A stretch of DNA of 63,973 nt, filler included, from Bigelowiella natans CCMP2755 (taxonomy: Eukaryota; Protista; Cercozoa): the NCBI GenBank assembly GCA_000320545.1. It is 9 parts of 9 records of this genome, joined end to end, with 100 filler letters (N's around TTAATTAATTAA, not from the genome) between each part and the next. Parts side by side here need not be neighbours in the genome. Positions count along the whole stretch, not along the records: positions 1 to 31,601 come from ADNK01000808.1; 8 more parts are not named here. One strand, given 5' to 3'. The notes beneath the pieces were generated by a model. The model was not told the DNA's origin. It did no database searches and saw only the letters and a list, made by a program, of their open reading frames with translations. This document shows positions 684 through 23,899 of the stretch, one piece after another. Position 1 is the first letter of the stretch. Each line of letters starts with the position of its first letter. A program made the position numbers and the translations under genes.

Positions 684-1196
684 GTAGGTGATACGAAGAA
701 GCAGGGTGAGGATGACTTTGGCTATCATCAGCATGCAGCAGCTAGGAACTAAGCAAGAAAGGAGCTGTGTGTTACTTTATACGGGTGACTATTGATGATA
801 CTACCATGCGCACACTGGCTAATGACCCACCATCTGAAGATCCATACACACACGCACACGCACACGCACGCACTGTGTGTATGTGTATGTGTATATCTAG
901 TGGCAGAACCTTCGCCAATTCGCAAAATGGCTTCGGATTGACACGGAAAAACCTGAGGTTGCAAGCAGTCCATGCATGGATATGGGCCTAAGAATTTTCC
1001 CTCAAAGGAGGCTGCTGTCCATCGTCGTATTACGAATATAGATCATAGTTAGTGTGTGCACGCACTCGATATTGAACATATCCTCTGGACTCGGCAAATT
1101 GTACTTCTGTAGGTTGTCGTAGAGGCCTGAGATCACAGGATGGAGGAGGGTGACCAAACAGTTGCAATGCATGGTATTAGCATGGGGAGTCGACTT

Positions 1197-1259
<63 letters not shown>

Positions 1260-1386
1260 TGCGAACATAGCTAAAGATTTGCAGCCATAAACTTTGCCAA
1301 AGCGCGAATATAAGCGTTCCCATGTCACGACAAAAATGTTTTCATACGTCAGACGGACGATCAATTTTGAGTGATGCGCGACACAG

Positions 1387-1473
<87 letters not shown>

Positions 1474-2049
1474 GTGCCTGGGGTCCTGAAGTCAGGGATA
1501 CCGGCGCTAACGCTTATTCCTGCCCCAGTCATCACGACGATGTTTGATATCTTCCCGTCCTAATGATGGTTTGTTAGGAGGGTATGGGGGGGGGGGGAGG
1601 GAAGAAGTGAGGAGGACGCAGAACCCAGATGTCGCTGAGACGACAAGACTTTTCACTTCTCTCTCTCAGTACGTGCCTTGATAGCCTTTGCGACTCCTTC
1701 GAGGGTCAGGGGAACGCCATTTGGGGACTTCTTCTTCGTCTCCTTTGCAGGTTCTGTTGGTGTCGGCGGTGACGCTGGTGGTGGCGGTTGTTTCAATGTT
1801 TGTTCTCCTTCCTTCTTTCCGGAATTATTCTCGTGCGGAGGCGATGACGATGGGGGTGGTGACTGTGTCTGCGCTTGCTCTCCGCCCCGCTGCTCATCGG
1901 GTGTGTTCTTCCTCGCAGCTTCTTTCCCATCATTTATTTCGACCTGCACATGAGAATGATCGACAACTTAGCGTGTTAGGGTTGGAGGAAGGCACAGGCT
2001 GCCTCTTCACGCAAAGGACCTTCGAAAGCTTCTCTGTGACATCATCCAT
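200..2049 (-). CDS. SIRT2: Class I sirtuin (SIRT2/Hst2-like NAD-dependent deacetylase), multi-exon, 3' end runs off the window start
   Basis: Spliced exons give LTLEGVAKAIK|DGKISNIVVMTGAGISVSAGIPDFRTPGTG|LYDNLQKYNLPSPEDMFNIE|FFRVNPKPFCELAK|GLYPGLYKPTPTHCFIRLLAEKK|VLLRNFTQNIDTLE; GAGIS, GIPDFR and TQNID are the Sir2 signature motifs. Start ATG at 2049 inferred. Confidence 0.9.
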
Positions 2050-6457: not shown

Positions 6458-7676
6458 ATGCCTCTTAAGAAGTGTTTTTCCTCCCCGCACTTGAGTCAAC
6501 TTGTCAAAGCAGCGGAAAAGGAAAGCTGTAGCCCAAGACCTAAGGCAAAACATAGAGCTGGTGGGTTGCCTGCCCCGCGTCCGAAAGTCAACGGGGAAGG
6601 AAACGCTCATCAAAAAGGAAAGAATGGCGGGAACGGCAATGGAGCCGGCGGCAGTGTGGGTACCCTGAATGGTGGAAAACTAAAAAAGTGTTTCTCATCA
6701 CCACATCTTAAGGACTTGAATAGCATTCCTGTTGGCGATGCTGCCGCGTCGGGTCAATACAGCAGCGGCCGCAAACGGCATGACGGCAGCAATACTTTCC
6801 GCAACGAGGTCATCAACTGTAGGTTCCGCTCCTGTGGATGCACTGTCCGCCTCTCTCGCGAGCGGATGGACTCCCACCTTCGCACAAATGCTGCGACCCA
6901 CTCACTGCTGATACTGAACAAGATCGATGACATCGGCCGGAAGAACGAGCAGATCTTCAAGCGCCTCGTCACAGTGGAGAAGTCGATACAGTCGATGAAT
7001 CAGCTCTTTGAAAACCTACAGGATGTGCTCACTAGGAAGGGGATCCCTACAGTAAAGCAGGAAGGTAGGTTAGGATTTGGGAGCACTGCAAATGCTGCCA
7101 GTATGGGGATACTCAGTAGTAATAATAGCAGTATTGAGGTGGGTGGCGGATTTGACCTGCTGCCACGTGTCAAAAGCGAGCACCTCGCGGCGTCCATGCA
7201 GCGACTCTTAGCACAGCAGGAGGCCGTCGCTAAAGAAGTTAAGATGCTCCCTCACTCATCTTCTCTCAAGGGGTTTGCCTCCAGCGACATTCTAGGCAGC
7301 GCTGGGGCCCCACACAGGAGGAATAACATCAGTAGCAGCATCAATAACAACAACAAGCGGGTGATGATGATGCCTGAACATTTAGATCTCGCAGTGGGCA
7401 ACGGACGTAGCACCCAGCATCATCCGAATAAGCGCCAGAGAAAGGAGCTGTCGTCTCTGCCGATGAACGGCATTGCTACTGCTACCTCTGCTATGTCGTC
7501 ATCGTCAACTCTCGGAGGAAGTGCTGGGTTCCATCATCCTGCTGCTAAGGCGAGCTCGGCTGCTTCGCTTTCATCCACAGCGCAGCAGCACCATTTCCAG
7601 AATGTCTACGGCATGAGTAACAGCGGCAGTGCCAGCGCCATGGCTCTAGCAAGGAGCCTCCAGCACAACTCGCACC

Positions 7677-7711
<35 letters not shown>

Positions 7712-8503
7712 CCTACCAACAACATTAGTCAACACCTCAACCTGCACCATTCCTCCTCCACCACCATCTCCTCCTCCTCCTCCCACCATCTCCATCACCA
7801 CCAGCAGCAGCAACAACATCACAACCCATATTCCTCCATGCTTCCTTCCGCAGCCGCCCAGATGAACAGTCATCATCGGGGCGGGGTGGCAGCCCGCCCC
7901 CACCGACCGCTCGATTCCGTTTCTCTGAGCGCCCAGACCAAACAGGCGGCCCGCCGCGTGCAGAACATCATCGATGCAAAGGCGGCGAAGGGGTTAGGAG
8001 CGGGCGGTGTTGGAGGTGTAGGTGGCAGCAATAGGCTCGGGGGATCGTCAGGCGGCTCCTCGCGGCGGAAGACCCGGTCCCGTGTGAAGAAGGGCAAGAA
8101 CATCTTCGAGGCGCCGAAGAAGCCGAAGACCGCCTATAACTACTACCAGATCGGCGTGCGCGAGAGCATCATGCTCGAGATCATGGGGGACGGCGCTGCA
8201 AACAGCAGCAAGGAGGTGCAGAGCCAGAAGGTCGCGCGGATCATCGGCGAGCGCTGGAAGAACATGCCTGAGCACGAGCGCGAAGCTTTCAACAACCTCG
8301 CTCTCCGCGACAAGCAGCGGTATAAGCGGGAGCTGGAGGAGTACGTTCAGCTCAAAGCACAGCTGAAAGAAGCGTGCAACAAGAACAATGCGGCTGCGGC
8401 TGCAGCTGCTGCCGCTGCTGCGGCGGTGGTCGGTGGAAGCCACCGCCATGCTATGGCGGCGCAACAGTTGGGGCAGCAGCAGCAGCGAGTGAGCTACCAC
8501 TAG
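6458..8503 (+). CDS. HMG-box protein with N-terminal TRAF-type zinc-finger-like segment, coiled coil and Q/H/S low-complexity middle; intronless 681 aa ORF
   Basis: APKKPKTAYNYY...IIGERWKNMPEHEREAFNNLALRDKQRYKRELEEY is a canonical HMG box; CRFRSCGCTVRLSRERMDSHL...H resembles a TRAF Zn finger. Confidence 0.85.
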
Positions 8504-9960
8504 CTACATGTGCTCGGAATCAAATGAACGCCACCCAGTGGAAGAAGGAAGAGAGAAGAACGCAACGTTTGTTTCTTAATAATCTGCATCGAATGATTCT
8601 ATATCTCCCCGTCATGGCTCGTCGGCATATCATTTCTGTAATTGGGAGGGAAAGCACCAACATCACGCTACGACGAAGACGTTGGGGGGGATTTGGTGTT
8701 TGTGTTGGTGGTAATTGTGTCTGCCCCCTCCTGTCAGAATGATAAGGATAACGACATTGCGGTGGATAGGTAACTATTATTTGTGAACATCTACCCAATC
8801 ACAAGAGAACGCAGGAAGACTCTTCATCGGCAGGGATGTGCGTGTGAAAGAGGGGGAATGAAGGAAGTAATGATAGAAGTCGTATCTACTTTATCGTATT
8901 TATACATCGAAAGAACACGTAGTTTACATATGTATTTATAGCAAATAATACCACCTTAATTCAAGCTTAGCTCGGTGCAATTTTGTAATGTGCACCCATG
9001 TGCGAAGGAGCTTAGCATGGATACTCACAACTGCTGAATGTAAAAATGCAGAACACCGTGTAGATCAAGTCAAATTGAAGAGAAATATAAAAAGAACCAT
9101 TGGCGATCGAAATTTTTGAATGTGAATCGTAAAAATAATCGTGTCGCTGATTTGATTGCTGTGCACAAGCGCACAATTCTAGAATGTTGTGTGTAGCAAT
9201 GCAACCAGCAACGTGCACAAATTACACACGGACGACAAGTCTGTTGTGTGTGCTGTGGTAGTCGATCAGGCTCATTGTAAGCAAATTTCCCATGCAGTGC
9301 AACACCTGAGAGTGCCACATGATGTCTCATCGATCTGCAATGTGCTGTCATGTTGCTGCAACATGTGAATGCGTCGCACGCATGCTGGCATGCTAGCTAA
9401 CAAACCCTGACATGTCACCTTTTAGTTGATGTGTCACCATGACAGACATGCAACACACGATGGGACGAATGACATTGTTGTGCACAGCTCATGTGTGCAA
9501 GAAGCTTGTTGTTTGTGCATGTGTAATGAAGAGTCTAGCTTTGTGCACATCGATGATCCCAAACCGAAATGAATGGATTGATGTTGTTGAGCGTGCAACA
9601 CACAAGGCAGTCCATGAAATTGCAAGGCACACTCATGATGGACACAGAAAACACGTGCTCCTAACAAGAACGCAGAACAAAATTTCGCGAACATCGTTCT
9701 ACGTGATTGTTTGCTTTTTGTCTGAGTCAAATTGGACAAAAATCATGTCTTAATCTAAATTTTGGTTGGCATCTCAATCAAATTTATTTCAAACACGTAG
9801 CTAGCACACACGTAATGCTTGTAGATATTCGCATTTTTTTAGGCAATATTCTTTACTTGATGTTGCGCAATTTGTCTTCGTAGCGTTTTTCATCTACTTC
9901 GTAGCGTTTTTCATCTTATTAGATCACTGTCAAACTTCTTTTGGCGGGTTAAAACCAAAA

Positions 9961-10681
9961 ATGAAACTACCTAGACTCAGCATGCTCAAGATCGATGTGG
10001 AGGGAGAGACTAAAAACACGTTGCGTAACAACTGGGTAAAGATGAATTCACCCCGCGTAAAATTTGACAAAGATGAAAACTTTGGACGGAGGCCGTGGAT
10101 GGGACGCAGATGGCGTCCCAGACGTTGTGAGATGGAGATGTTGAAAAATTTGAGGAGTCCATCTCATGAAAACTCGATCTTTGTGTTTGAAAAAACACCC
10201 ATGAAGGACAAGTCAAACGTGATTCCCATCTTAAATCTTTCTCAATCATCGCCTTGTGCGGAGAATTTTCCATCGATTCACCGCAAAACCTTTGTTCGCA
10301 AAGCCATAGACGAAAATTGGGAACGAAGCATCAGTCGTTCACCGAAAATTGGGTTGCCAAGTTTGCAAACCAATTCCATGTCTTCGCTGGTGAGACGTGT
10401 AAGTGCTTTGAAGGCATCAGATAAACAACAAAAGTTGCTGCGGAAGAAGGGTGAGATCGTCGTTTAGTTTTGTTTTGCATCAACAATTCATTGTTTGCTT
10501 GTTTCCAGGAAAAAAAGTCGTTAAACGTTGTTGGACTGAAGGCAAGGAATGGAATCAGATTGAACAACGAAACTATGCCCATGAAATATCTAAATTCGAA
10601 AAAGGACCACTTCGAAAATTGCAACTATTAAATCAAAGTGAACTGGAAAAAAATGGAGTTTTTGTTAAACCACAAATTTGA
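9961..10681 (+). CDS. Hypothetical protein (two exons, intron about 10451-10509), partly TpA-eroded; possibly cargo of an outer repeat
   Basis: 168-aa ORF continues after a gt..ag intron into GKKVVKRCWTEGKEWNQIEQRNYAHEISK; no recognisable domain. Confidence 0.35.
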
Positions 10682-12181
10682 GATGACTGGCATCCATTCT
10701 TTGCATTGGGTGCATCATGAACATTTGCGTGCTTCACAGATGTTCTTTGCTTGTCAATAAAGAGCCTTGTTTTTGTGACCCATGCACGTTCTGTGCGCAA
10801 CATGCATGCAAACATTGTTTGTCGGGTTGCATGCCACTACAAGTTGTGAAATAGGCAATTTGTCAATTGTGCACAACAAAACATCCTCTCGGTCCAGTGA
10901 GCCGTTTTTGAACTAAGTTTGAGGTGTCAACGGACTTTCACAACGAATTTCGCAAGATGACTTCAGAGCAGATTTTGAAAATTTCTGATGTCGTCAAGAA
11001 CATCCATTTTGAGTTCAGGAAACCTAAAAATTGGAATGAAAAAGATGACATTGTTGAATGGAAATTTAAGCATGTCTATGAATCAGATTCTGATTCTGAA
11101 TGACATGATGCTGAGGATTTCGATGCAGATGATGATTCCAATTTCAAACAGTGATGACACATCTTTGAATTCTTGCAAATCGAAAACTTGATCATGAGCG
11201 TTGCACAAAATGCAGTTTTGGAGCAAAATGCCGTTTTGAAACAATGCGCACAGCAATGTGAGCAACATCGAAAGCGGTGCGCACGACACACAAGCATGCG
11301 CTGCCGCGTGCTGTTGCATGGCTTGCACGGTTCGGTGCACGTGAGCATTCTGGATTGCGCGTGCGTGCATTGCGCATTGCACGCTGCATTGCTGCAATGC
11401 GAGCGGCGCAGCTGCACGCTAGCTGCGTGCGAACGTGGCAGCAAATCATTGCACAAAGACGTCTTTGATTCACAACTTGACGCAGCAGCATGTGCTGCTG
11501 CGTGCAGGAATCGTGCGTTTTGCCATGTCGTGCGTGCAGAGCTGCTCGTCTACAAGTGTCTGCGTTTCGTCGGCGCGCGTTGTGCGCAGCGCAGCTGGCT
11601 GCCAGCTGCGCGCCGTCGTCGCATTGCACTTCATTGTTGCAGCTGTGCGATGCGTGAGGTGGGCACTTCACGTGCAGGCAGTCTCACCAGCAGCGTGGCG
11701 TGCTGCTCGGGCACAGCATGGCAGTGCGTGCAGCCAATTATTAAGCGTTGCACAAAATGCAGTTTGCTGCAAAAAGCACGATGCGCAATGTGCGTTTGAC
11801 ATGCACTGCGCAGTCGACCACATGTGTTTGCACAACAAGCTAGCAAGGCAGTGCATGCATGCGTGCGCATGCCGCGCATGCACGCACGCGTTGTTCATTG
11901 TCACATTGACCTCGTTGCGAGTGCGCTGCCATCAATCAAATGCTTTATCTGCACGCGCACACGCGTGCACGCACGCGCGATTGTGGTTGGCAATTGCACG
12001 CGTGGCACGATGCAGTTTTGCCTGTTTGATGCAGCAAGCTTTTTGTCATGCAAATTGCGTGCTTCAGCACTCTGCATGATGATGTGAGAACGTTGCATGC
12101 AGACGCGTGCAGTTTGCATGCACTTGCATTGCACACTCGTGCGTGTGCGCATGCTGCAGTGCACGCACACTGCATTGCAGC

Positions 12182-13487
12182 TCACGGCCTCTGCTCGTCT
12201 CTTGCGAGGGCCCGCTGCCGCACTCTGTCTGCCCTGCTGTCTCGGGCGTGCATTTTCATTAGTTGAGCCTCCCACCTGCGCATTGCAGCGTCCTGTGCTG
12301 CAGCATGCCGCGAGGAGGAACGAGGCTTCCGTGCGCGCCGCTCACCTGCAGGAGCTGACGCTCTGCTGCCAATGCTGCGTGCATTGGCAGGCCTTTTTGC
12401 ACGTGGCACAGAGCCAGTGGCCCTGGCCACGTCCCAGCTGCGTTTGACACCGCGCTGGTTGCGGGAGTTTGCCCTGACAGGTCTGAACTTGTTCTTGACC
12501 TGTTGGGCATACGTGCACGTGAGGTCACGAGGCAAGTGGACGTTTGCATGCGTTCACCTGTGTCAGCTGGAACACCAGGGACGCAGCAACGTCGTGGAGG
12601 TCTCTGTGATGCCTCCACGAGGTCATCACCCTCCAACCTTTTAATCGGGAGAACACGTTCTCCACGATTACTCGTGTGGCACCAAATGCCCTGTTGCTGT
12701 CACTGTCAGCAGCAGGCATGGGCCTCCCACGAGGTTTCCTGCGGGGAGTGACGTACTTCGGGTCTCGCCTACACAAGTACGCCCCATCCCCACCAATGCG
12801 CTCGAACCACTCTACTTGAGTGTCGAGCCGTTCCCCCCCCCCCCCCAGCCTCTCCCCGATCGATGGAGAGGTCAGAGGTGGCAGCGGGATGTCCGCTGCT
12901 CACCCAACACAGGTCGCCGGTGGATACAGACACGGCGGCCACGTATCGTTTGGCGAAAGCCCTGTTTTTGAAGGTCCAGAAGCGTCTCTGGTCTTCCTTC
13001 AATTTGGGCTTGCCAATGGGGCAATCTGTCGCATCGACGTATAACGTCACATGCGATGCAGGCCCACTTGCACGAATCAAGTTGCTCTTTCTGGCTTCCA
13101 ACTTAATTTCGTGCATGTGGGCCCCAAGGGTTACGACGGGAACCCAGCACTTATAATTATAAGTGTTTCTGTGCATTTTCCATATTGCTGCACCCTGCTG
13201 TTGCGTGGGATACACCCACACGAAGTGCAGGGCCAGCAGCACGTCCTTCCTGAGAAGGCCCGTCTCGTAACGATACTTGTCCCACAAGTATTGTACCTCC
13301 TGCAAGCTCAGGCCGAACATAGATACCCAGGCCTCATTCGAGAACCTGTGAAAGTATCTTTCATATAGTTCGACCCAAGCTTCCCTCTCCTCAGCGGCTC
13401 TGCGAGGGGAAAGGAGGTCAAGAGCATGAGGGCAACGGGAGAAGCAAAAAGGGCATACGTTGTAAAAGAGCCCGCCCTCCTGCTCAT
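12182..13487 (-). pseudogene. DDE transposase (DDE_Tnp_4, PIF/Harbinger/IS5-like) of element A; 3 exons; +1 frameshift in a G14 run near 12833-12846
   Basis: Motifs YVDATDCPIG, RYVAAVSVSTGDLCWVS, SD, GDGAYLC, RVIVENVFSRLKGW; two ~58-bp gt..ag introns; spliced C-terminus QLTQ|VKNKFRPVR aligns to element C's VQIKNRFRPVR. Confidence 0.85.
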
Positions 13488-13524
13488 GTGTGTGGCCTGA
13501 CTCTAAGTTTAAAAAAAAAAAAAA

Positions 13525-13795
13525 AAAGCTCAATTTACTATGATTGAGCTTTTATTCGAAAAAGCTCAAAGCTCATTGGGCTTTTTCAAATTTCGCCCCC
13601 GAGCTTTCGCCTCAATATGAGGCAGTTTCGCTCGCTGCTCGCTCAGCAGGCACAGCAAGTTCTAAATTGCTTGCTGACCGAGTCTGAGCACCTATGGGTC
13701 ACCACAGACCCGAAAGCTCGCGATTCAAAAAAAGCTCAATTAGCAGAAGCTCAAAGCTCAAGCTCATTGAGCTTTACTTTGAAGCATTGAGCTTT
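13525..13795. promoter_or_regulatory. Array of AAGCTC/GAGCTT motifs in the bidirectional intergenic region of A (mirrored in B at about 21400-21675)
   Basis: About a dozen aagctc/gagctt hexamers in both orientations between the divergent starts; function inferred only. Confidence 0.4.
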
Positions 13796-14094
13796 CATCG
13801 CAGGCACGCGGATATTATCATCCTTTGCGTGCCCGAGTGCCTTGGCGAGACTGCCATCAGCACTTGTCGCTCTGGCAAGAACGACTGCGATGTTTCCAAA
13901 ACAAGATTCCGGGAGCACCGCACCGTGCTTTAATTTCGCGCGGGAAGAACTTCCGGAATCTTGACTTTAGAAGTTATTCGGGGTTCGTGTTGTCTCGATG
14001 TTAAGCAACAGCAGCAACAACATCGACGACGAACACCCAAACATAACTCAAATTGACTGTCGAGCTTTAAACTAAAGAAACACCGCAACTTTAA

Positions 14095-14877
14095 ATGGGG
14101 CTCAAATGGACCAACGAGATGGACAGAAAGCTCAAGGGGGGGATAAAGACTATCCCCGTAGACAAGCTCTCTCGCCCCTGGGTCTACCTGGCTAAGACAT
14201 ACTTTAGCTCAGGGAGAGGCCGGGCCAATCCTGGCCAAATAAAGAGAAGAGCTCGAACCCTTGAGCTAAAGCCTTCCTCCAAGCAGAGCGATGATCGCGT
14301 CCCCTCTTCCAGCTCCAGGAAAAGGAGGAGGGAGGACAGCGACTTGAGCTGCTCGGAGGAAGACGACATAGAGCAAGAGCAACTACAGGAGGCCATGGAA
14401 GGCCTCCTGCGGGGACCTGATCCCTTCGAACTTAAGTGCAAACAAGGCACTTGGATGCTGATGAACAGGATCAGCAGAGCCTCATATAAGTTCGAAGTGG
14501 ACAAGGTCCACCGAATGATAAAGGTAACTTTATTCGTAACTTTGTTGCATGTTCATTTGTCAGCATGCATTCATATCAACTGAGGCACGTTGATGTGAAT
14601 GCATGCACTTTTTGACTTTCAGGTGAAACTGAAAGTCAAACCACCGAAAGACTCTGAGGATGTGAAAGAGTTCTCATCCAAGAGTGTGTCGGTGAAGTCC
14701 TTGCTGCGCAAGGTGAAGGTCCCGGCCACGCACCACGAATGCAACATTCGGGTGCCAGCCGGGACGACTCTGGAGAAGTTCGAAGTTAAGCAAACGGGGA
14801 GGTATGTCGGGGTTTATTTTCACGAGGAGTCGGTGTGGGACGGTGACACCAAGGAACTCCCCAGTGAATCCGAGTAG
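14095..14877 (+). CDS. Myb/SANT-like accessory protein of element A with C-terminal beta-sandwich (alpha-crystallin/HSP20-like) domain; intron 14524-14622; 227 aa
   Basis: KWTNEMDRKLKGG...PWVYLAKTYF...NPGQIKRRARTL fits Myb/SANT; the in-frame splice gives RMIK|VKLKVKPP; the C-terminus is homologous to the element C partner gene. Confidence 0.75.
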
Positions 14878-15635
14878 CCGGTGTGGCCCCCGTTTGCTTT
14901 GTCTTTCACTGTTTGCCATGCCTGCACACTTGCACGTCGCAGTGTGCAGTTTTGCTTTCGTAACATTGCTTGTTGCACAACACTGTGCATTGGTGCATTG
15001 GCTGCACGCACTGCCATGCTGTGCCCGAGCAGCACGCCACGCTGCTGGTGAGACTGCCTGCACGTGAAGTGCCCACCTCACGCATCGCACAGCTGCAACA
15101 ATGAAGTGCAATGCGACGACGGCGCGCAGCTGGCAGCCAGCTGCGCTGCGCACAACGCGCGCCGACGAAACGCAGACACTTGTAGACGAGCAGCTCTGCA
15201 CGCACGACATGGCAAAACGCACGATTCCTGCACGCAGCAGCACATGCTGCTGCGTCAAGTTGTGAATCAAAGACGTCTTTGTGCAATGATTTGCTGCCAC
15301 GTTCGCACGCAGCTAGCGTGCAGCTGCGCCGCTCGCATTGCAGCAATGCAGCGTGCAATGCGCAATGCACGCACGCGCAATCCAGAATGCTCACGTGCAC
15401 CGAACCGTGCAAGCCATGCAACAGCACGCGGCAGCGCATGCTTGTGTGTCGTGCGCACCGCTTTCGATGTTGCTCACATTGCTGTGCGCATTGTTTCAAA
15501 ACGGCATTTTGCTCCAAAACTGCATTTTGTGCAACGCTTTGTGCACCAATGCACAGTGTTGTGCAACAAGCAATGTTGCGAAAGCAAAACTGCACACTGC
15601 GACGTGCAAGTGTGCAGGCATGGCAAACAGTGAAA

Positions 15636-16159
15636 GGGCATTGTTAAATCACGCGTTCCAGCGCCAAAAGTGCGCAATGTGTCGTTGATGTTGACCTTTG
15701 ATCATTGCATGTCGGTTTGATGGGCGCGGGAAGCATGCATGTGCTCATTTCACCGCATTGTCACCTCACGACAGCGCACCTGGCCAGCCATCTCGCATTT
15801 TTGTTTTGACACAAAGTGGCTTCTACGTGCCTCACATTCGTGCCACTTTCTCTTCGCCTCTGATGACATCGAGCGCTTTGCTGCGTTTTGTGCGCTTGCG
15901 TTGCGTGCTAGCGTGTGCCATTCGCAACGCTCACAATTGATCGAGCGGGAAGGGGGCAAAGTGCATGCGCAATCGGTCAGTCGGCATTGGGCCCATTGGA
16001 TGTCAATTGAAGCACGAGTTGTGACGACTGTCACCGATCTGACGGCTAATCCTTTTCCAACGGCTAGACGACGGGCAGACGGGCGCGCGCGCGTCTGCGT
16101 GCACTGCAGTGCATCACAGCTAGCAGGTTTGGCTCACGCACATGCATGACATGGTTGCA
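15636..16159 (+). repeat. Left TIR of element C
   Basis: Reverse complement of 19763-20283 with few differences, several of them TA versus CA/TG. Confidence 0.9.
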
Positions 16160-16675
16160 TCAGGATTCGTGGTGCAGATGCGGGCTTTGTTGGAAACCCA
16201 TGGATGACAAAATGGCATCATCGTCTGACGATGATCCAGACGATGAAATCAGGTCAATCACGTCAGCCTCCAGAGCCTTTCTCTCTCTGTAGGTGGGTCT
16301 CTGGGCCCTCTGGCTGCTGCAATCATCCCAACAACCGCTGTCGTTTCGGTTGTTGGAAATCACACTCTCCTCGTCACTGGGCCGATGGGAAGATTCAGAG
16401 GGCCGAGAGGCCAAGCTGCAGAGAGAATCCGCGGAACCGAGAGTGGCGCTGCTGTCGTCGCAATCGCCGCTCTCATGGTCCTCGGATGCCTCGTGTGGGT
16501 CGCAATCATCGTCGTGTTCGCATTCGTCATCACCACTCTCACGCGAAGAAGAAACAGAAAAATCATCTTTCAATGCAACCAGTTCCTTGTGCACAGTGTC
16601 GAGCTCAGGTTGTTCAATGTTCAGGAAACACGTGGGCGTCTGTCTCTGCGGTGGTCGAGGCAATGAAGTCTTCAT
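16160..16675 (-). CDS. Possible third ORF of element C (acidic, Ser-rich, 171 aa)
   Basis: Open frame with D/E/S-rich composition downstream of the Myb gene; ORF openness is inflated by loss of TA-containing stops. Confidence 0.25.
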   Translation of the reverse strand: MKTSLPRPPQRQTPTCFLNIEQPELDTVHKELVALKDDFSVSSSRESGDDECEHDDDCDPHEASEDHESGDCDDSSATLGSADSLCSLASRPSESSHRPSDEESVISNNRNDSGCWDDCSSQRAQRPTYRERKALEADVIDLISSSGSSSDDDAILSSMGFQQSPHLHHES

Positions 16676-16708
16676 TCGCGTGGGGATGACGGGATGAGAA
16701 GGGGTTTG

Positions 16709-17407
16709 TCAAAAACCTGGTTCGTCGTCATCGTCAGACGCTCCTAGAATCATTTGTTCTTTTGTGACTGATGGGATGCACACGCCTGCCCAATGGTCAT
16801 TTTTCGCACAGGTAGCAGAGGTCAGGAGCAAGTCATCTGGTGCCGTCATTGCGAAATTGTGTGTCACGTTCCCGGTGAAGTGGCAATCGATGTGACGCAA
16901 TGTGTCTTTTGTGTCGCCGGCCTGTTGCCCTTTTCTCCCGAATTTGCCCAAATCCTTTGCAATTTTTGGAGGTTTGCAAGTTGCTCTGACCTCCACCATG
17001 CTGTGAAGTGGCTCCATCACAAATTGGCACTTGATCAGTGGTGTTTTCTGCCACATCAACCATGCCCCCCCGCTTCCTTTCAAGTTGAAAGGCTGGGGAC
17101 CATTGTTCAACATTTTTTCAAGGTCATCCAAACGCGAGTCCATTGTCGCGTTGTTCAATTCCTCCTTTGAGGATTTGAGGGGTTCAATGCTTAGTCTGGA
17201 TCGTTTGTGAGGGTGCTCGGAAGACTTTGGCTGCTTTCTTTTTTTCAGATCAACATCCAAACGTGTTGTTTTGTTCCTCACTTGGACGCTCGCAAATTTT
17301 CCATTGAATGAGTTGGTGCTAATCCATTTCCAAGGAGTTGGGCAATTCTCCGGAACCATGGCAATCCCCTTTCGAAGTGTTTCCATGTTTTCCACAGTCC
17401 ACTTCAT
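16709..17407 (-). pseudogene. Myb/SANT + alpha-crystallin-like accessory gene of element C (Tyr codons converted)
   Basis: MKWTVENMETLRKG...PWKWISTNSFNGKFASVQVRNKTTRL; GPQPFNLKGSGGAW...KPPK...WAGVCI parallels GPDPFELKCKQGTW...KPPK...YVGVYF of A; no Tyr in 232 aa. Confidence 0.75.
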
Positions 17408-18331
17408 TCTGCGGGGGTTGGTTCAGGTCCAGTTTGTTCAGGTCGGAGGCTTGGAGTCAAGGTCAGAGAGGTCAGAGAGATGCAAACACCTGAGAGCTGA
17501 GCGCGTTTGAGTTTTGCGCACTTGCCTGATCGATTGCGCAGTTGTTGACACTGCCCACGTGCATTCGGAGGGAAGGTGTTTCGCTTGACTTTTCCGCGCC
17601 CATTTGTTTCGCTCAACGTTTCCGCGCCGCGCCCACTTCCCACGTTCTGAATCTGCAATCTCAAATGTCAGTGTTTTGACACTCTGTGCAATTTCAAGGA
17701 AAAAAATGACAATGACAAAAACAATGAACTGCAACAAAAGTGACAATGAAAACACAAACAACAAAACAAAACAAAAAATTGAACAAGAATGACCATTCAT
17801 TTTTCCCCCAAAAAAATGAGTTTCCGAGCGCACAAAAATGAAAACTTGTGAACGCGTTCTTTGTGTTCTTTCCTTCTGCTTTCAACAGCCGTCTTCTTGC
17901 TGCATGAACCTTTTTGTTCAAGTGTTTTGCCGATGTCATCTGCCATTGATGCAGCAGAAGATGACATCGGGCAAACTTGTGGGTGGAAAGCACTTTTGAA
18001 CGAGAAGACGGGCGAAAACCTAAAAATCGAACGCGTTCAGAACGCGTCCATGAACGCGTTCTGAACGTGTTTTTTTCCGAAATGAACAGGTCATTTTTGA
18101 TTTCAAAATGAGACTTTGACATGGCATTTTGAGTGTTCCTTTTGAAATTTTCAAAAAATCGTTTTTGGCGCCTTTGCACCTTGCTCATTTTTTTGGGTAC
18201 TTTCAGTGTGGACATCTTCAACGCGTCATTTTGTGTGGCTGGAAAACATTGCAACGGGCATGGTCGCGTAGCTGTGCGCCCATTGCAACGGAGGTCGGTC
18301 ACGCAGTTGCCAAACACAAAGCCACACCAGA

Positions 18332-19552
18332 ATGGTCTGTGCCGACGACTGCAGAGACATTTCCATGATGACATTCAAGCGTCACTTCTTCAGATGTAGA
18401 CATGGCACATTCAAGGCAATCACAGGGTTGACAATGGATGAGTTCTTGTGCTTGCATTTTCGGCATGCAAAGCCGAACGGGATGGGCATTGAACATTGCA
18501 TGTTGACTCAACACTTTGCATGGAGATGTCCGACGACTGAAGAAGGAGCTGCTGTGTGGCGATGTTGCAGACAAACACACGCTGACAAAGCTCTTTCAGG
18601 GACAGGCACACTCGGCACAGTGGTGAGACACAATGAGACAAAGAAAGAAAACAGATTCAAAGACAGGATCATTCTCCATGGTCCTGCATCATGCTGCAGC
18701 ATGATGACTGACTGCGCCGATTTTTGTGTGACCAAACCTGCAACCAAAGAGGAGCAAAAAAGGCACTGGACGTTCAAGCGAAGGTCTTTCGCTCACAGAC
18801 ATGGAACAGCAGTTGGTGTCACGACTGGAGATTTGTGTTGGGTGTCTGAAGGTGATCCAGCTGGATCAAAGGGAGATTTGACGATCACCCGAAGAGATGG
18901 ATCATTGGAGGGCATGAAATTTTTCGAACGAATGGGAGCGGATGGCGCTCACCTTTGCAAAAAAGACCCAGAAATGACATGCCCACACAGAAAAAAGAGG
19001 AACCAGTCTCTCACCCAAGCCCAACGACAATGGAACACGGAATTCAGCAGACACAGATCAACAGTGGAAAACGTGTTCAGTCGCGTTGAACAATTCAACA
19101 GCATGCGGAAGTGGAGACACAAGAGAGAAATGCACCCAGCTCTTGCTCATTGCGTGTTTGGAGTCGTGCAAATCAAAAACAGATTCAGACCAGTGCGCAA
19201 TGTGGACAGGAGTTCAATCGACAACACAACATCGTGGGCCCAAGCAGAAGCCAATGGTGTGCCAACAATCCCTGGCAATCAAGTAGCAGCGCGCAGAAAC
19301 AGGGCCAAGAGAAAGGCTGCTGCAATGGCCAACGAGGACACAGACAGTGACTCTGATGCACCACCTGCTCCAGCTCCAGCTGCTTTTAACGTCAACATTG
19401 CGGACGGCTTAGCTTTGGAAATGAGAAACAGAGAATGCATGAGAGAAGTGTTGAGAGAACACAAAGATGGTGAGAGGAGAGACAGATCAATGAGAAGGAA
19501 AATGCGTGCACAGGGAAGACATGACAGGACTAACCCTGACAATGAACAATGA
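18332..19552 (+). pseudogene. DDE transposase of element C (open frame but no Tyr; DGAY->DGAH)
   Basis: MTDCADFCVTKP, RHGTAVGVTTGDLCWVS, GADGAHLCKKDP, RSTVENVFSRVEQF; colinear with the A/B transposase. Confidence 0.88.
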
Positions 19553-19762
19553 CATGCTGAAACACAACAATGTGCAATGCAATGAACGGTGGAATGATTC
19601 GAAACTTGTCGCTTGCTTGCTCAGCTTTGCCGTCCCAATTCCACCATCGTGATGACGAGAAATCACGTGCAACACTGCAATTGAAATGTCACCATGTCAC
19701 CGCACAGCAGGGCAACGCGCTCGATTTGCAATGAACAAACATTGTGTTCAATCCGACACGTC

Positions 19763-20283
19763 TGCAACCATGTCATGCATGTGCGTGAGCCCAACCTGCT
19801 AGCTGTGATGCACTGCAGTGCACGCAGACGCGCGCGCGCCCGTCTACTCGTCTAGCCGTTGGAAAAGGATTGGCCGTCAGATCGGTGACAGTCGTCACAA
19901 CTCGTGCTTCAATTGACATCCAATGGGCCCAATGCCGACTGACCGATTGCGCATGCACTTTGCCCCCTTCCCGCTCGATCAATTGTGAGCGTTGCGAATG
20001 GCACACGCTAGCACGCAACGCAAGCGCACAAAACGCAGCAAAGCGCTCGATGTCTTCAGAGGCGAAGAGAAAGTGGCACGAATGTGAGGCACGCAGAAGC
20101 CACTTTGTGTCAAATCAAAAGTGCGAGATGGCTGGCCAGGTGCGCTGTCGTGAGGTGACAATGCGGTGAAATGAGCACATGCATGCTTCCCGCGCCCATC
20201 AAACCGACATGCAATGATCAAAGGTCAACATCAACGACACATTGCGCACTTTTGGCGCTGGAACGCGTGATTTGACAATGCCC
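19763..20283 (-). repeat. Right TIR of element C
   Basis: Inverted copy of 15636-16159. Confidence 0.9.
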
Positions 20284-20312
20284 AAAGACAAAGCAAACGG
20301 GGGCCACACCGG

Positions 20313-21095
20313 CTACTCGGATTCACTGGGGAGTTCCTTGGTGTCACCGTCCCACACCGACTCCTCGTGAAAATGAAGCCCGACATGCCTCCCCGTTTGC
20401 TCAACTTCGAACTTCTCCAGAGTCGTCCCGGCTGGCACCCGAGTGTTGCATTCGTGGTGCGTGGCCGGGACCTTCACCTTGCGCAGCAAGGACTTCACCG
20501 ACACACTCTTGGATGAGAACTCTTTCACATCCTCAGAGTCTTTCGGTGGTTTGACTTTCAGTTTCACCTGAAAGTCAAAAAGTGCATGCATTCACATCAA
20601 CGTGCCTCAGTTGATGTGAATGCATGCTGACAAATGAACGTGCAACAAAGTTGCGAACAAAGTTGCCTTTGTCATTCGGTGGACCTTGTCCACTTCGAAC
20701 TTGTGTGAGGCTCTGCTGATCCTGTTCATCAGCATCCAAGTGCCTTGTTTGCACTTGAGTTCGAAGGGATCAGGTCCCCGCAGGAGGCCTTCCATGGCCT
20801 CCTGTGGTTGCTCTTGCTCCATGTCGTCTTCCTCCGAGCAGCTCAAGTCGCTGTCCTCCCTCCTCCTTTTCCTGGAGCTGGAAGAGGGGACGCGATCATC
20901 GCTCTGCTTGGAGGAAGGCTTCAGCTCAAGGGTTCGAGCTCTTCGCTTTGTTTGGCCAGGATTGGCCCGGCCTCTCCCTGAGCTGAAGCATGTCTCAGCC
21001 AGGTGGACCCAGGGGCGAGAGAGCTTGTCCACGGGGATGGTCTTTGTCCCCCCCTTGAGCTTTCTGTCCATCTCGTTGGTCCATTTGAGCCCCAT
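20313..21095 (-). pseudogene. Myb/SANT accessory gene of copy B (hypermutated)
   Basis: Same as 14095-14877 but I->T, Y->H, Y->C, L->P, K->E substitutions, nearly all from TA->CA/TG. Confidence 0.85.
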
Positions 21096-21709
21096 TTGAA
21101 GTTGCGGTGTTTCTTCAGTTCAAAGCTCGACAGTCAATTTGAGTTGTGTTTGGGTGTTCGTCGTCGATGTTGTTGCTGCTGTTGCTTGACATCGAGACAA
21201 CACGAACCTCGAATGACTTCCAAAGTCAAGATTCCGGAAGTTCTTCCCGCGCGAAATTGAAGCACGGTGCGGTGCTCCCGGAATCTTGTTTTGGAAACAT
21301 CGCAGTCGTTCTTGCCAGAGCGACAAGTGCTGCATGGCTGATGGCAGTCTCGCCAAGGCACTCGGGCACGCAAAGGATGATGACATCCGCGTGCCTGCGA
21401 TGAAAGCTCAATGCTTCAAAGTGAAGCTCAATGAGCTTGAGCTTTGAGCTTCTGCCAATTGAGCTTTTTTTGAATCGCGAGCTTTCGGGTCTGTGGTGAC
21501 CCGTGGGTGCTCAGACTCGGTCAGCAAGCAATTTGGAACTTGCTGTGCCTGCTGAGCGAGCAGCGAGCGAAACTGCCTCACATTGAGGCGAAAGCTCGGG
21601 GGCGAAATTTGAAAAAGCCCAATGAGCTTTGAGCTTTTTCGAACAAAAGCTCAATCACAGCAAATTGAGCTTTTTTTTTTTTTTTTTGACTTGGAGTCAG
21701 GCCACACAC

Positions 21710-23014
21710 ATGAGCAGGAGGGCGGGCTCTTTTGCAACGTGTGCCCTTTTTGCTTCTCCCGTTGCCCTCATGCTCTTGACCTCCTTTCCCCTCGCAGAGC
21801 CGCTGAGGAGAGGGAAGCTTGGGTCGAACTGTGTGAAAGATGCTTTCACAGGTTCTCGAATGAGGCCTGGGTGTCCATGTTCGGCCTGAGCTTGCAGGAG
21901 GTGCAACACTTGTGGGACAAGCATCGTCACGAGACGGGCCTTCTCAGGAAGGACGTGCTGCTGGCCCTGCACTTCGTGTGGGTGCATCCCACGCAACAGC
22001 AGGGTGCAGCAACATGGAAAATGCACAGAAACACTTGCAATTGCAAGTGCTGGGTTCCCGTCGTGACCCTTGGGGCCCACATGCACGAAATCAAGTTGGA
22101 AGCCAGAAAGAGCAACTTGATTCGTGCAAGTGGGCCTGCATCGCATGTGACGTTGCACGTCGATGCGACAGATTGCCCCATTGGCAAGCCCAAATTGAAG
22201 GAAGACCAGAGACGCTTCTGGACCTTCAAAAACAGGGCTTTCGCCAAACGATGCGTGGCCGCCGTGTCTGCATCCACCGGCGACCTGTGCTGGGTGAGCA
22301 GCGGACATCCCGCTGCCACCTCTGACCTCTCCATCGTTCGGGGAGAGGCTGGGGGGGGGGGGGAACGGCTCGACACTCAAGCAGAGTGGTTCGAGCGCAT
22401 TGGTGGGGATGGGGCGCACTTGTGTAGGCGAGACCCGAAGTGCGTCACTCCCCGCAGGAAACCTCGTGGGAGGCCCATGCCTGCTGCTGACAGTGACAGC
22501 AACAGGGCATTTGGTGCCACACGAGTGATCGTGGAGAACGTGTTCTCCCGATTGAAAGGTTGGAGGGTGATGACCTCGTGGAGGCATCACAGAGACCTCC
22601 ACGACGTTGCTGCGTCCCTGGTGTTCCAGCTGACACAGGTGAACGCATGCAAACGTCCACTTGCCTCGTGACCTCACGTGCACGCATGCCCAACAGGTCA
22701 AGAACAAGTTCAGACCTGTCAGGGCAAACTCCCGCAACCAGCGCGGTGTCAAACGCAGCTGGGACGTGGCCAGGGCCACTGGCTCTGTGCCACGTGCAAA
22801 AAGGCCTGCCAATGCACGCAGCATTGGCAGCAGAGCGTCAGCTCCTGCAGGTGAGCGGCGCGCACGGAAGCCTCGTTCCTCCTCGCGGCATGCTGCAGCA
22901 CAGGACGCTGCAATGCGCAGGTGGGAGGCTCAACTGATGAAAATGCACGCCCGAGACAGCAGGGCAGACAGAGTGCGGCAGCGGGCCCTCGCAAGAGACG
23001 AGCAGAGGCCGTGA
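21710..23014 (+). pseudogene. DDE transposase of copy B; exons 21710-21738, 21798-22638, 22697-23014 (hypermutated, frame intact)
   Basis: ELCERCFH, QHLWDKHRH, NTCNCKCW, GDGAHLC versus ELYERYFH, QYLWDKYRY, NTYNYKCW, GDGAYLC in A. Confidence 0.88.
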
Positions 23015-23899
23015 GCTGCAATGCAGCGTGCGTGCACTGCAGCATGCGCACACGCACGAGTGTGCAATGCAAGTGCATGCAAACTGCACGCGTCTGCATG
23101 CAACGTTCTCACATCATCATGCAGAGTGCTGAAGCACGCAATTTGCATGACAAAAAGCTTGCTGCATCAAACAGGCAAAACTGCATCGTGCCACGCGTGC
23201 AATTGCCAACCACAATCGCGCGTGCATGCACGTGTGCACGTGCGTGCACGCGTGTGCGCGTGCAGATGAAGCATTTGATTGATGGCAGCGCACTCGCAAC
23301 GAGGTCAATGTGACAATGAACAACGCGTGCGTGCATGCGCGGCATGCGCACGCATGCATGCACTGCCTTGCTAGCTTGTTGTGCAAACACACGTGGTCGA
23401 CTGCGCAGTGCATGTCAAACGCACATTGCGCATCGTGCTTTTTGCAGCAAACTGCACTTTGTGCAACGCTTCATGTGAAAACTGTGCACATGTCCAAAAA
23501 CATGTGAAAACATTGAAGCTTGCAAGATGCATTTGCGATGTGGCAATGACAGAAAAATGCATCGATCTCATGCAAAGATGTTGAATGGGGCGCTGAAGCA
23601 TTCAATTGATTTCATCCGCGTGTGACTGCCAGTCGTTGCATGCATCGCAAATGGCACAATGACACAACCACTTGGAACATGGAGAAGACATGTTTGGTGC
23701 ATGTGAGGAAACTGAGAACCTTTGCTTTGACCCAAATTTTTGAGCCACACTCGTGATGGACATGCAATGCACTGCACGTGTGATGCACATTGTGCATTGC
23801 TGTGTCTGTCATCACCCAATGCTGCCACTGCAAAAAGGATTTGCATGTTGTGAGATCTAGTGTTGTGTCATGAGACGAAGTAGAGGCTCACGTGTGCAA

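What the first reader, a model, noticed from the sequence alone, without database searches (positions are those of the whole stretch)
11197..23470. Reverse-RIP: repeat-targeted TpA->TpG/CpA (T:A->C:G) hypermutation, a candidate undescribed genome-defence system
Seen: aligning copy A (12640-13487) with copy B (about 21710-22560) by hand, A has 29 TpA sites and B has lost 28 (15 TA->TG, 13 TA->CA). The only other differences are one A->T and a G-run indel. B's 3.2 kb right part (20284-23470) has only 3 TA. Polarity: A has the conserved DDE_Tnp_4 motif GDGAY and ordinary Tyr usage, whereas B and C have GDGAH/ADGAH and no Tyr, so TA is ancestral. Known: fungal RIP goes the opposite way (CpA->TpA). 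Inference: a process that converts adenines in TpA to G on both DNA strands of transposons, for example by DNA adenine deamination to hypoxanthine (TadA/ADAT-like) or T:G-misinserting synthesis. I know of no named system with this polarity but cannot search the literature. No effector gene is in this window.
Basis: partly seen in the sequence, partly recalled or inferred. Interest (0 to 1): 0.97.

Follow-up and report, generated by a model that had tools for sequence, protein, structure and literature searches.

The report
TpA hypermutation of Bigelowiella transposons
This is a nest of Harbinger DNA transposons in the alga Bigelowiella natans in which the older copies have had almost every TpA changed to CpA or TpG; the pattern and its direction are real, but a 2026 preprint already reported this hypermutation.

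Summary
Copy A (11740-14906) and inverted copy B (20284-23474) differ at 86 substitutions. 73 of them are TpA in A against CpA (43) or TpG (30) in B. B keeps 3 TpA in 3.2 kb and gains none. A roughly 15.8-kb domain (about 9250-25000) is almost TpA-free.

Transposases from other organisms have Tyr where B, C and three B. natans paralogues have His or Cys. B and C have no Tyr.

The locus is three nested Harbinger/PIF elements in the Bigelowiella natans nuclear genome.

The process is not undescribed. Mettrop et al. (bioRxiv 10.64898/2026.01.13.699255) saw de novo TpA-only A:T>G:C hypermutation in B. natans mutation-accumulation lines. Their TpA-depleted CDS lists include paralogues of this family and a scaffold-15 model next to E1's.

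"Repeat-targeted" is not supported, and the effector is still unknown.

Additions here: copy-level proof on transposons, an insertion chronology, TpA-free termini already present in the mobile ancestors, and Tyr-free Harbinger contigs with CA/TG doublets in two metagenome assemblies of unknown organism.

The parts
9250..25000 (.). TpA-depleted, CpA/TpG-enriched domain (about 15.8 kb), interrupted only by the centre of E1
   Evidence: rho TpA is 0.30 in the left flank, 0.02-0.10 in E2, G and the termini, and 0.12 in the right flank, against 0.70 and 0.83 outside. The right edge is sharp near 25000.
11197..11738 (+). E2, piece 1: terminal 542 bp of the old Harbinger copy, cut off by the insertion of E1. 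The same 5 bases (TCATG) lie just outside E2 at 11192-11196 and 23471-23475.
   Evidence: (I4, 100% to 14997-15538)
11744..15538 (-). It has terminal inverted repeats and is flanked by TTA (11741-43) and TTG (15539-41). Its centre, 12501-14900, keeps 73 TpA; both termini are TpA-free.
12185..13533 (-). E1 transposase (DDE_Tnp_4). It has two exons (12534-13533 and 12185-12502), Tyr is retained (GDGAY), and there is a frameshift in a G-run at 12833. It corresponds to JGI model Bigna1 71268 (P0010).
14095..14583 (+). E1 second ORF (162 aa), in the position of the Harbinger Myb-like protein. It has no Pfam hit of its own.
   Evidence: a relative's neighbouring ORF has a weak Myb_DNA-binding hit
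15542..15635 (+). E2, piece 2: 94 bp lying between the E1 and G insertions
   Evidence: (I8)
15636..20283 (+). G: second Harbinger family (4648 bp), inserted in E2 with target duplication AAA (15633-35 and 20284-86). Its inverted terminal repeats are 524 and 521 bp (15636-16159 and 19763-20283). rho TpA is 0.08.
   Evidence: (I5, I9)
18332..19552 (+).
16709..17407 (-). G second ORF (232 aa), a distant homologue of the E second ORF (23% identity, E 6e-11)
20284..23470 (+). 73 sites that are TpA in E1 are CpA or TpG here.
21622..23011 (+). E2 transposase (ORF 21622-22671 plus second exon 22694-23011). It has 0 Tyr, with His or Cys at the conserved Tyr positions (GDGAH).
20607..21095 (-). E2 second ORF, 93% identical to that of E1. 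The differences include Y>H, Y>C and I>T, the amino-acid changes TpA loss produces.
6458..8503 (+). Host gene left of the domain (HMG-box protein, 681 aa), with normal TpA
24908..27016 (+). Host gene right of the domain (U-box plus CCCH zinc finger, 702-aa ORF). TpA returns to normal from about 25000.

Best explanation
The window is Bigelowiella natans nuclear DNA, probably scaffold 15 of the JGI assembly. It holds three nested PIF/Harbinger transposons.

Shown: an old copy (E2) was invaded by an element of a second family (G) and by a younger copy of its own family (E1). In E2, in G and in 1.5-2 kb of DNA on either side, nearly every TpA has become CpA or TpG. One hit per site destroys the target on both strands. 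E1 still has the TpA of its coding centre.

Shown elsewhere: this is the footprint of the TpA-specific A:T>G:C hypermutation that Mettrop et al. (2026) observed arising de novo in B. natans mutation-accumulation lines.

Inferred: E1 kept its TpA because it arrived after the mutation episodes. The process acts on a chromatin-like domain of silenced foreign DNA rather than on sequence repeats. The chemistry is most likely enzymatic deamination of adenine to hypoxanthine in 5'-TpA-3' of DNA, on either strand. I put adenine deamination at about 0.5; the effector is unidentified.
For: Organism: EukProt Bigna1 hits. P0010 (Bigna1 71268, scaffold 15) maps to E1 at 95-100%.

Spectrum: 73 of 76 TpA sites are converted and no TpA is gained. 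Non-TpA A/T positions change at 0.5%.

Polarity:
- Of 11 columns where outgroups carry Tyr, 9 are His or Cys in both B and C.
- B and C have 0 Tyr; E1's protein has 12; outgroups have 12-17.
- The His-versus-Cys choice differs between paralogues, which indicates independent hits.
- Under the opposite (RIP) direction, the chance that copy A acquired no stop codon is about 0.05.

Architecture: the three joined E2 pieces are colinear with E1 end to end. The junctions are read directly.

Literature: de novo TpA>CpA/TpG mutations arose in 11 of 15 lines and a subset was confirmed by PCR and Sanger sequencing. 324 TpA-depleted CDS are enriched for DDE endonuclease domains. Paralogues 137242, 73733 and 143930, and the scaffold-15 model 71270, are in those lists.

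Rate check: the preprint's numbers give about 1.1e-5 per TpA per generation, so 96% loss takes about 3e5 generations. That fits the 0.3% non-TpA divergence between E1 and E2.
Against: - Nothing in the window shows the chemistry or the trigger.
- E1 sits untouched inside the depleted domain. A purely regional, still-active process should have hit it. At the giant-virus insert's rate about 2.7 hits would be expected in the published experiment; the portion of the preprint's tables held here lists no such mutation on scaffold 15. Whether this repeat was callable there is unknown.
- Gene conversion from an intact copy, or a chimeric assembly of family members, could also produce E1's mosaic of TpA-free ends and normal centre.
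- I had no reads.
Confidence: 0.88

Rival explanations
1. Thymine-directed chemistry. The T of TpA is modified (for example oxidised by a TET/JBP-type dioxygenase to 5-hydroxymethyl- or 5-formyl-uracil) and mispairs with G, giving T>C on either strand.
For: TpA is self-complementary, so the 43 CA and 30 TG outcomes fit T>C as well as A>G. From general knowledge, 5-formyluracil mispairs with G, and dinoflagellate 5hmU favours TpA. Neither point was tested here.
Against: No dioxygenase or modified base is known for this process. The preprint's one candidate is an ADAT2-like deaminase. tRNA adenosine deaminases naturally act on an A preceded by U (general knowledge).
Confidence: 0.15
2. Classical RIP-like C>T at CpA/TpG. 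On this reading B and C are ancestral and copy A is the mutated one.
For: The pairwise differences alone are symmetric: 73 of 601 CpA/TpG sites in B would have become TpA in A.
Against: - Outgroups have Tyr where B and C have His or Cys.
- The ancestor would need 3 TpA in 3.2 kb and a Tyr-free transposase.
- A has no stop codons (P about 0.05).
- The direction has been observed de novo in the laboratory.
Confidence: 0.01
3. Sequencing or assembly artefact. A base modification is miscalled, or reads from different family members were merged.
For: X and X' are 100% identical, and E1 is a mosaic of depleted ends and a normal centre. I could not examine reads.
Against: - The same signature appears in four separately annotated paralogues with different His/Cys choices.
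- It appears in independent Illumina mutation-accumulation data, part of it checked by PCR and Sanger sequencing.
- It appears in two unrelated metagenome assemblies.
- The nested junctions are clean.
Confidence: 0.02
4. RNA-level A-to-I hyperediting (ADAR-like) of hairpin transcripts from the inverted copies, copied back into DNA.
For: The locus is a large inverted repeat able to form double-stranded RNA. ADARs favour a 5' U (cited).
Against: - These are DNA transposons with no RNA intermediate.
- TpA specificity is strict and conversion reaches 96%.
- Parts with no inverted partner in the window, and both flanks, are equally depleted.
- The published target is single copy and transcriptionally silent.
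Confidence: 0.02
5. Homology (repeat)-triggered targeting. The chemistry is the same as in the best explanation, but the trigger is sequence duplication.
For: All fully depleted segments are transposons with other copies in the genome.
Against: E1, the closest repeat of E2, is spared. Flanks with no second copy in the window are depleted. A single-copy viral insert is a target.
Confidence: 0.1

Closest known systems
TpA hypermutation of integrated viral and other foreign DNA in Bigelowiella natans (Mettrop et al., bioRxiv 10.64898/2026.01.13.699255)
   Same: Same species, same TpA>CpA/TpG spectrum, and the same long-term footprint of low TpA with high CpA+TpG. DDE-transposase CDS are among their depleted set, including paralogues of this family and a neighbouring scaffold-15 model.
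   Different: Their direct evidence is for a giant-virus insert and a virophage insert. Transposons are inferred only from Pfam enrichment and called 'potential' targets. This locus gives a rooted copy-against-copy comparison, near-complete saturation, an insertion chronology, and a spared young copy.
Fungal repeat-induced point mutation (RIP)
   Same: Dinucleotide-specific transition hypermutation that inactivates mobile DNA and can spill into neighbouring sequence.
   Different: The direction is opposite (RIP is C:G>T:A at CpA and creates TpA). RIP is homology-triggered and hits both copies. Here an adjacent near-identical copy is spared and single-copy DNA is a target.
ADAR hyperediting and A-to-G-edited retroelements in animals
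   Same: A>G outcome and a preference for a 5' U/T.
   Different: ADARs act on double-stranded RNA, with loose context and partial editing. Here DNA transposons and silent DNA are affected, strictly at TpA, up to 96%.
APOBEC3/AID cytosine deamination of retroviruses and retroelements
   Same: Host-imposed, context-specific mutational inactivation of invading DNA.
   Different: Those enzymes give C>U (G>A) in TC/CC contexts on single-stranded DNA, with strand-coordinated clusters. Here the change is A:T>G:C at TpA with no strand clustering (runs test).
TadA/ADAT2 tRNA adenosine deaminases and laboratory TadA-derived adenine base editors
   Same: Adenine-to-hypoxanthine chemistry with a T/U before the target A (general knowledge). 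The preprint proposes an ADAT2 homologue.
   Different: No natural DNA-directed activity has been shown in this alga. No 3' C preference is seen in the strand choices here.

Membership tests
B. natans TpA hypermutation (Mettrop et al. 2026) | Changes are almost exclusively A>G / T>C | tested here: met
   80 of 86 substitutions between E1 and E2 are A>G or T>C in the E1-to-E2 direction.
B. natans TpA hypermutation (Mettrop et al. 2026) | Changes are confined to TpA | tested here: met
   73 of the 80 fall on TpA: 96% of TpA sites against 0.5% of other A/T positions.
B. natans TpA hypermutation (Mettrop et al. 2026) | Direction is TpA lost, not gained | tested here: met
   Outgroup Tyr against His/Cys; Tyr-free ORFs.
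B. natans TpA hypermutation (Mettrop et al. 2026) | Occurs in the B. natans nuclear genome on foreign or mobile DNA | tested here: met
   Bigna1 identities; DDE_Tnp_4; family members in the paper's lists.
B. natans TpA hypermutation (Mettrop et al. 2026) | Arises de novo at a raised rate in some lines | not testable with these tools
   Needs reads from mutation-accumulation lines at this locus.
Fungal RIP | C:G>T:A at CpA, creating TpA | tested here: not met
   Opposite polarity.
Fungal RIP | Triggered by duplication; both copies mutated | tested here: not met
   The centre of E1 is spared next to saturated E2. A single-copy target is published.
PIF/Harbinger transposons (the mutated elements) | DDE_Tnp_4 transposase | tested here: met
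   E 2e-13 (B) and 4.8e-11 (C).
PIF/Harbinger transposons (the mutated elements) | Second, Myb-like DNA-binding ORF | tested here: inconclusive
   A second ORF is present in E1, E2 and G and is homologous between families, but it has no Pfam hit. A relative's neighbouring ORF has a weak Myb hit.
PIF/Harbinger transposons (the mutated elements) | Terminal inverted repeats and a 3-bp target duplication (usually TWA) | tested here: inconclusive
   Terminal repeats are clear. G has AAA/AAA. E1 has TTA/TTG, which fits TTA with one TpA hit. E2 is flanked by TCATG/TCATG. The E1 junction carries a few unexplained extra bases.
ADAR-type RNA editing | Needs a double-stranded RNA substrate and an RNA-to-DNA route | tested here: not met
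   These are DNA transposons. Parts without an inverted partner are equally depleted.

The most novel reading that the evidence does not exclude
The TpA-directed mutator is not confined to the sequenced B. natans strain, and it has shaped transposon evolution.

First, Tyr-free, TpA-depleted Harbinger contigs occur in two unrelated metagenome assemblies. Their family is only 42% identical to any annotated B. natans protein. Two copies differ mainly by adjacent CA-versus-TG doublets, the footprint of independent hits on one ancestral TpA.

Second, the mobile ancestors of both families in the window already had TpA-free non-coding termini. This suggests that lineages survive sub-lethal exposure, or evolve TpA avoidance, while their coding TpA is preserved by selection for transposition.
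Probability: 0.4. Interest if true: 0.6.

Novelty: already known. Interest (0 to 1): 0.5.

Why it matters
A host process that turns A:T into G:C at one dinucleotide in invading DNA mirrors fungal RIP. It would be a natural counterpart of laboratory adenine base editing, so the phenomenon itself is important. Credit for it belongs to the 2026 preprint.

This locus adds a clean, rooted example on transposons:
- Saturation is fast compared with ordinary divergence (about 0.3% non-TpA divergence).
- An adjacent duplicate can escape, which argues against homology as the trigger.
- The depleted domain reaches 1.5-2 kb past the elements and ends just downstream of the start of the neighbouring gene's ORF.

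There is also a practical warning. Losing TAA and TAG leaves long open frames on both strands: 5.2 per kb against 2.1 and 3.8 in the two outer parts of the window. Gene models in such regions are therefore suspect.

Tried and rejected
- Exact-protein look-ups for window ORFs and for a B. natans paralogue found nothing, so no other B. natans copies could be fetched.
- The flanking U-box gene has no close named relative. The organism came from the transposase search instead.
- Two general literature searches on RIP, TpA and hypermutation missed the preprint. A species-based search found it, and a further search found no other report.
- ORFs in the depleted flanks have no Pfam hit, and the flanks share no repeat with each other or with the rest of the window. 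Whether they are old mobile DNA or host DNA reached by spreading stays open.
- The strand choices show no preference for the bases either side of TpA, and no runs of same-strand hits (37 runs against 36.3 expected). The CA:TG split of 43:30 is not significantly uneven.
- I looked for CA-versus-TG doublets between the two terminal repeats of G and found none. I read this as depletion before G's insertion rather than after.
- No Rfam family and no tRNA gene in the window.
- The target duplications of E1 and E2 could not be settled.
- The stored copy of the preprint's supplementary tables is cut short, so its cluster table could not be checked for this locus.
- Homologues in Amorphochlora amoebiformis keep Tyr and normal TpA. 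That is too few copies to say the process is absent there.

Full report

Yes. The repeat finder shows that 11740-14906 (copy A) is the reverse complement of 20284-23474 (copy B) at 96-99% identity. A MAFFT alignment gives 86 substitutions and four indels.
- Of 77 TpA sites in A, B has CpA at 43, TpG at 30 and TpA at 3. One lies at the element edge.
- B has no TpA that A lacks, and no site became CpG.
- A>G or T>C changes outside TpA number 7 among about 1327 A/T positions. Five of those are CpA/TpG in A against CpG in B, and could equally be CpG decay in A.
- B has exactly three TpA.

A dinucleotide map shows that TpA is nearly absent from about 9250 to 25000, except in 12500-14900. CpA and TpG rise to 1.5-2.4 times expectation there. 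The outer parts of the window have rho(TpA) of 0.70-0.83.

**2. What the locus is**

The transposase ORFs match Pfam DDE_Tnp_4. Their closest relatives are Bigelowiella natans proteins from the JGI annotation. One of them, P0010 (Bigna1 71268, a scaffold-15 model), maps to copy A at 95-100%. The window is therefore B. natans nuclear DNA.

Reading the junctions resolves the inverted repeats into three nested PIF/Harbinger elements.
- **E2**, the old copy, is now in three pieces: 11197-11738, 15542-15635 and 20284-23470.
- **G**, from a second family (15636-20283), has inverted terminal repeats of 524 and 521 bp.
- **E1**, a younger copy of the E family (11744-15538), also sits in E2, flanked by TTA and TTG.

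The three E2 pieces, joined, are colinear with E1 along its whole length. Each element has a second ORF beside the transposase. Host genes flank the domain: an HMG-box protein at 6458-8503 and a U-box/CCCH protein at 24908-27016.

**3. Polarity**

- I took the columns where at least two of four outgroup transposases from other organisms (P0013, P0015, P0016, P0017) have Tyr. In 9 of those 11 columns, B and C both have His or Cys. Paralogues P0011, P0012 and P0014 mostly do as well, while E1's protein keeps Tyr in 8.
- B and C have no Tyr at all. E1's protein has 12 and the outgroups have 12-17.
- The His-versus-Cys choice at a given column differs between paralogues, as expected from independent TAY>CAY or TAY>TGY hits.
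- Under the opposite direction (RIP-like CpA>TpA), about 13% of hits in the ORF would create stop codons. The chance that copy A has none is about 0.05.

TpA is the ancestral state.

**4. It is already described**

- In mutation-accumulation lines of B. natans, 231 of 302 new single-nucleotide mutations fell in a giant-virus insert and a virophage insert. All but one were A>G or T>C, and all of those lay on TpA.
- The events arose in only some lines. A subset of the mutations was confirmed by PCR and Sanger sequencing.
- The authors found 324 TpA-depleted CDS enriched for DDE endonuclease and reverse-transcriptase domains, and 124 genomic clusters of TpA-poor, CpA+TpG-rich windows.
- They propose adenine deamination, with an ADAT2 homologue as candidate.
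- Their supplementary lists contain this family's paralogues (137242, 73733, 143930). They also contain scaffold-15 model 71270, two identifiers after E1's 71268. E1's own model is absent from the lists, as expected.
- Their giant-virus target is single copy.

A further search found no other report. The finding is an independent rediscovery of a real and remarkable process, not a new one.

**5. What this locus adds**

a) Copy-level, rooted evidence that DNA transposons are targets. The preprint inferred this only from domain enrichment.

b) A chronology. E1 interrupts E2 yet keeps 73 TpA in its centre (rho 0.53, like outgroup contig L001 at 0.55). E2 has 2 TpA over the same stretch. Non-TpA divergence between the two is only about 0.3%. 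The preprint's figures give about 1.1e-5 per TpA per generation, so 96% loss would take about 3e5 generations. Saturation is fast compared with ordinary divergence.

c) The trigger. An adjacent, near-identical inverted duplicate escaped, while flanks with no second copy in the window are depleted. This argues against a RIP-like homology trigger and for a domain or chromatin state, or for episodic activity that ended before E1 arrived.

d) TpA-free termini. The termini of E (11744-12500 and 14901-15538) are TpA-free and essentially identical in E1 and E2. The two terminal repeats of G show no CA-versus-TG discordance. In both families the non-coding ends were therefore already TpA-free in the mobile ancestor. 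Either the lineages survived earlier exposure, or they avoid TpA.

e) No extended motif. The strand choices show no preference for the bases either side of TpA and no strand runs. This is unlike APOBEC clusters.

f) A gene-prediction caveat. Loss of TAA and TAG leaves 5.2 open stretches of at least 90 codons per kb, against 2.1 and 3.8 in the outer parts of the window. Many gene models in such regions may be spurious.

**6. Beyond the window**

A profile search of 1.8 billion representative proteins, screened for Tyr content, found Tyr-free Harbinger transposases on metagenome contigs:
- P0031 (L002) and P0189 (L009), both from ENA assembly ERZ21854029;
- P0178 (L008), from ERZ23491953.

All nine conserved Tyr columns are His or Cys in P0031. 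The contigs have rho(TpA) of 0.0-0.2.

L002 and L008 are 99.5% identical over 2073 bp. Eight of their 11 mismatches form four adjacent CA-versus-TG doublets. That is the footprint expected when one ancestral TpA is hit independently on opposite strands in two copies.

The closest annotated B. natans protein is only 42% identical. No E-family protein from these assemblies appeared. The source organism is unknown and may not be B. natans. I could not identify it.

Homologues in Amorphochlora amoebiformis keep Tyr and normal TpA. That is too small a sample to conclude anything.

**7. Mechanism**

- **Shown:** the spectrum, its polarity, its saturation, one hit per site, and its extent.
- **Shown elsewhere:** de novo occurrence.
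- **Inferred:** adenine deamination in 5'-TpA-3' of DNA (about 0.5). It is favoured because tRNA adenosine deaminases act on an A preceded by U (general knowledge) and because an ADAT2 homologue exists.
- **Rival chemistry:** modification of the thymine in TpA (about 0.15). Sequence cannot exclude it, because TpA is self-complementary.
- **Judged very unlikely:** classical RIP, artefact, and RNA editing.

**8. Verdict**

Direction and specificity are right; 'repeat-targeted' and 'undescribed' are not. Novelty: already known. Interest is moderate. The phenomenon is striking, the effector is unknown, and the locus gives useful constraints and a possible extension to other organisms.

Noticed in passing
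L002:1197-3269 and L008:1-2073; also L009: TpA-depleted Harbinger contigs encoding Tyr-free transposases, from two unrelated ENA metagenome assemblies (ERZ21854029, ERZ23491953). The two near-identical copies differ mainly by four adjacent CA-versus-TG doublets. The source organism is unknown, and the nearest annotated B. natans protein is only 42% identical.
   Followed up: partly
window 11744-12500, 14901-15538, 15636-16159, 19763-20283: The non-coding termini of both Harbinger families are TpA-free and identical between copies of different age. They were therefore TpA-free in the transposing ancestor, while the coding centre of E1 has normal TpA.
   Followed up: partly
window 14901-25000 (for example the antisense ORF 21697-22824): TpA loss removes TAA and TAG, leaving long open frames on both strands (5.2 per kb against 2.1 and 3.8 in the outer parts of the window). 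Gene models in such regions are unreliable.
   Followed up: yes
window 12833: E1's transposase has a one-base frameshift in a G-run. JGI model 71268 steps over it with a predicted intron. It could be a real inactivating mutation or a homopolymer error.
   Followed up: no
window 11192-11196 and 23471-23475; 11739-11743 and 15539-15541: E2 is flanked by the same 5 bases (TCATG) rather than the usual 3-bp TWA duplication. The E1 junction has TTA/TTG plus a few extra bases that I could not explain.
   Followed up: partly
window 9250-11196 and 23471-25000: Sequence with no second copy in the window, on both sides of the transposon nest, is also TpA-depleted (rho 0.30 and 0.12). The right edge is sharp, about 90 bp into the U-box gene's ORF. 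This is either spreading into host DNA or unrecognised old mobile DNA.
   Followed up: partly
window 26515-26682: Three to four 42-nt (14-residue) tandem repeats lie inside the U-box/CCCH ORF.
   Followed up: no
window 1002-1535 (minus strand); microsatellites at 1189-1470, 27750-27900, 28780-28950, 29240-29320, 29560-29600, 31260-31340: A short ORF piece resembles the NAD-binding motif of a sirtuin and is interrupted by an (AC)n/(AT)n microsatellite. Several long AC, AT and GT microsatellites occur in the outer parts of the window.
   Followed up: no
L003, L004, L005 (Amorphochlora amoebiformis GCA_054601695.1): DNA around the Harbinger homologues of this second chlorarachniophyte is extremely AT-rich (GC 0.10-0.30) with TpA enriched (rho 1.6-1.9). 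This is the opposite of the B. natans domain. The elements themselves have normal TpA.
   Followed up: no
P0180 / P0179 (Bigna1 63222, scaffold 49; Bigna1 80220, scaffold 69): G-family transposase models at least 90% identical to the window's copy exist on two other scaffolds. One is a 'kg' model, which may mean transcript support.
   Followed up: no
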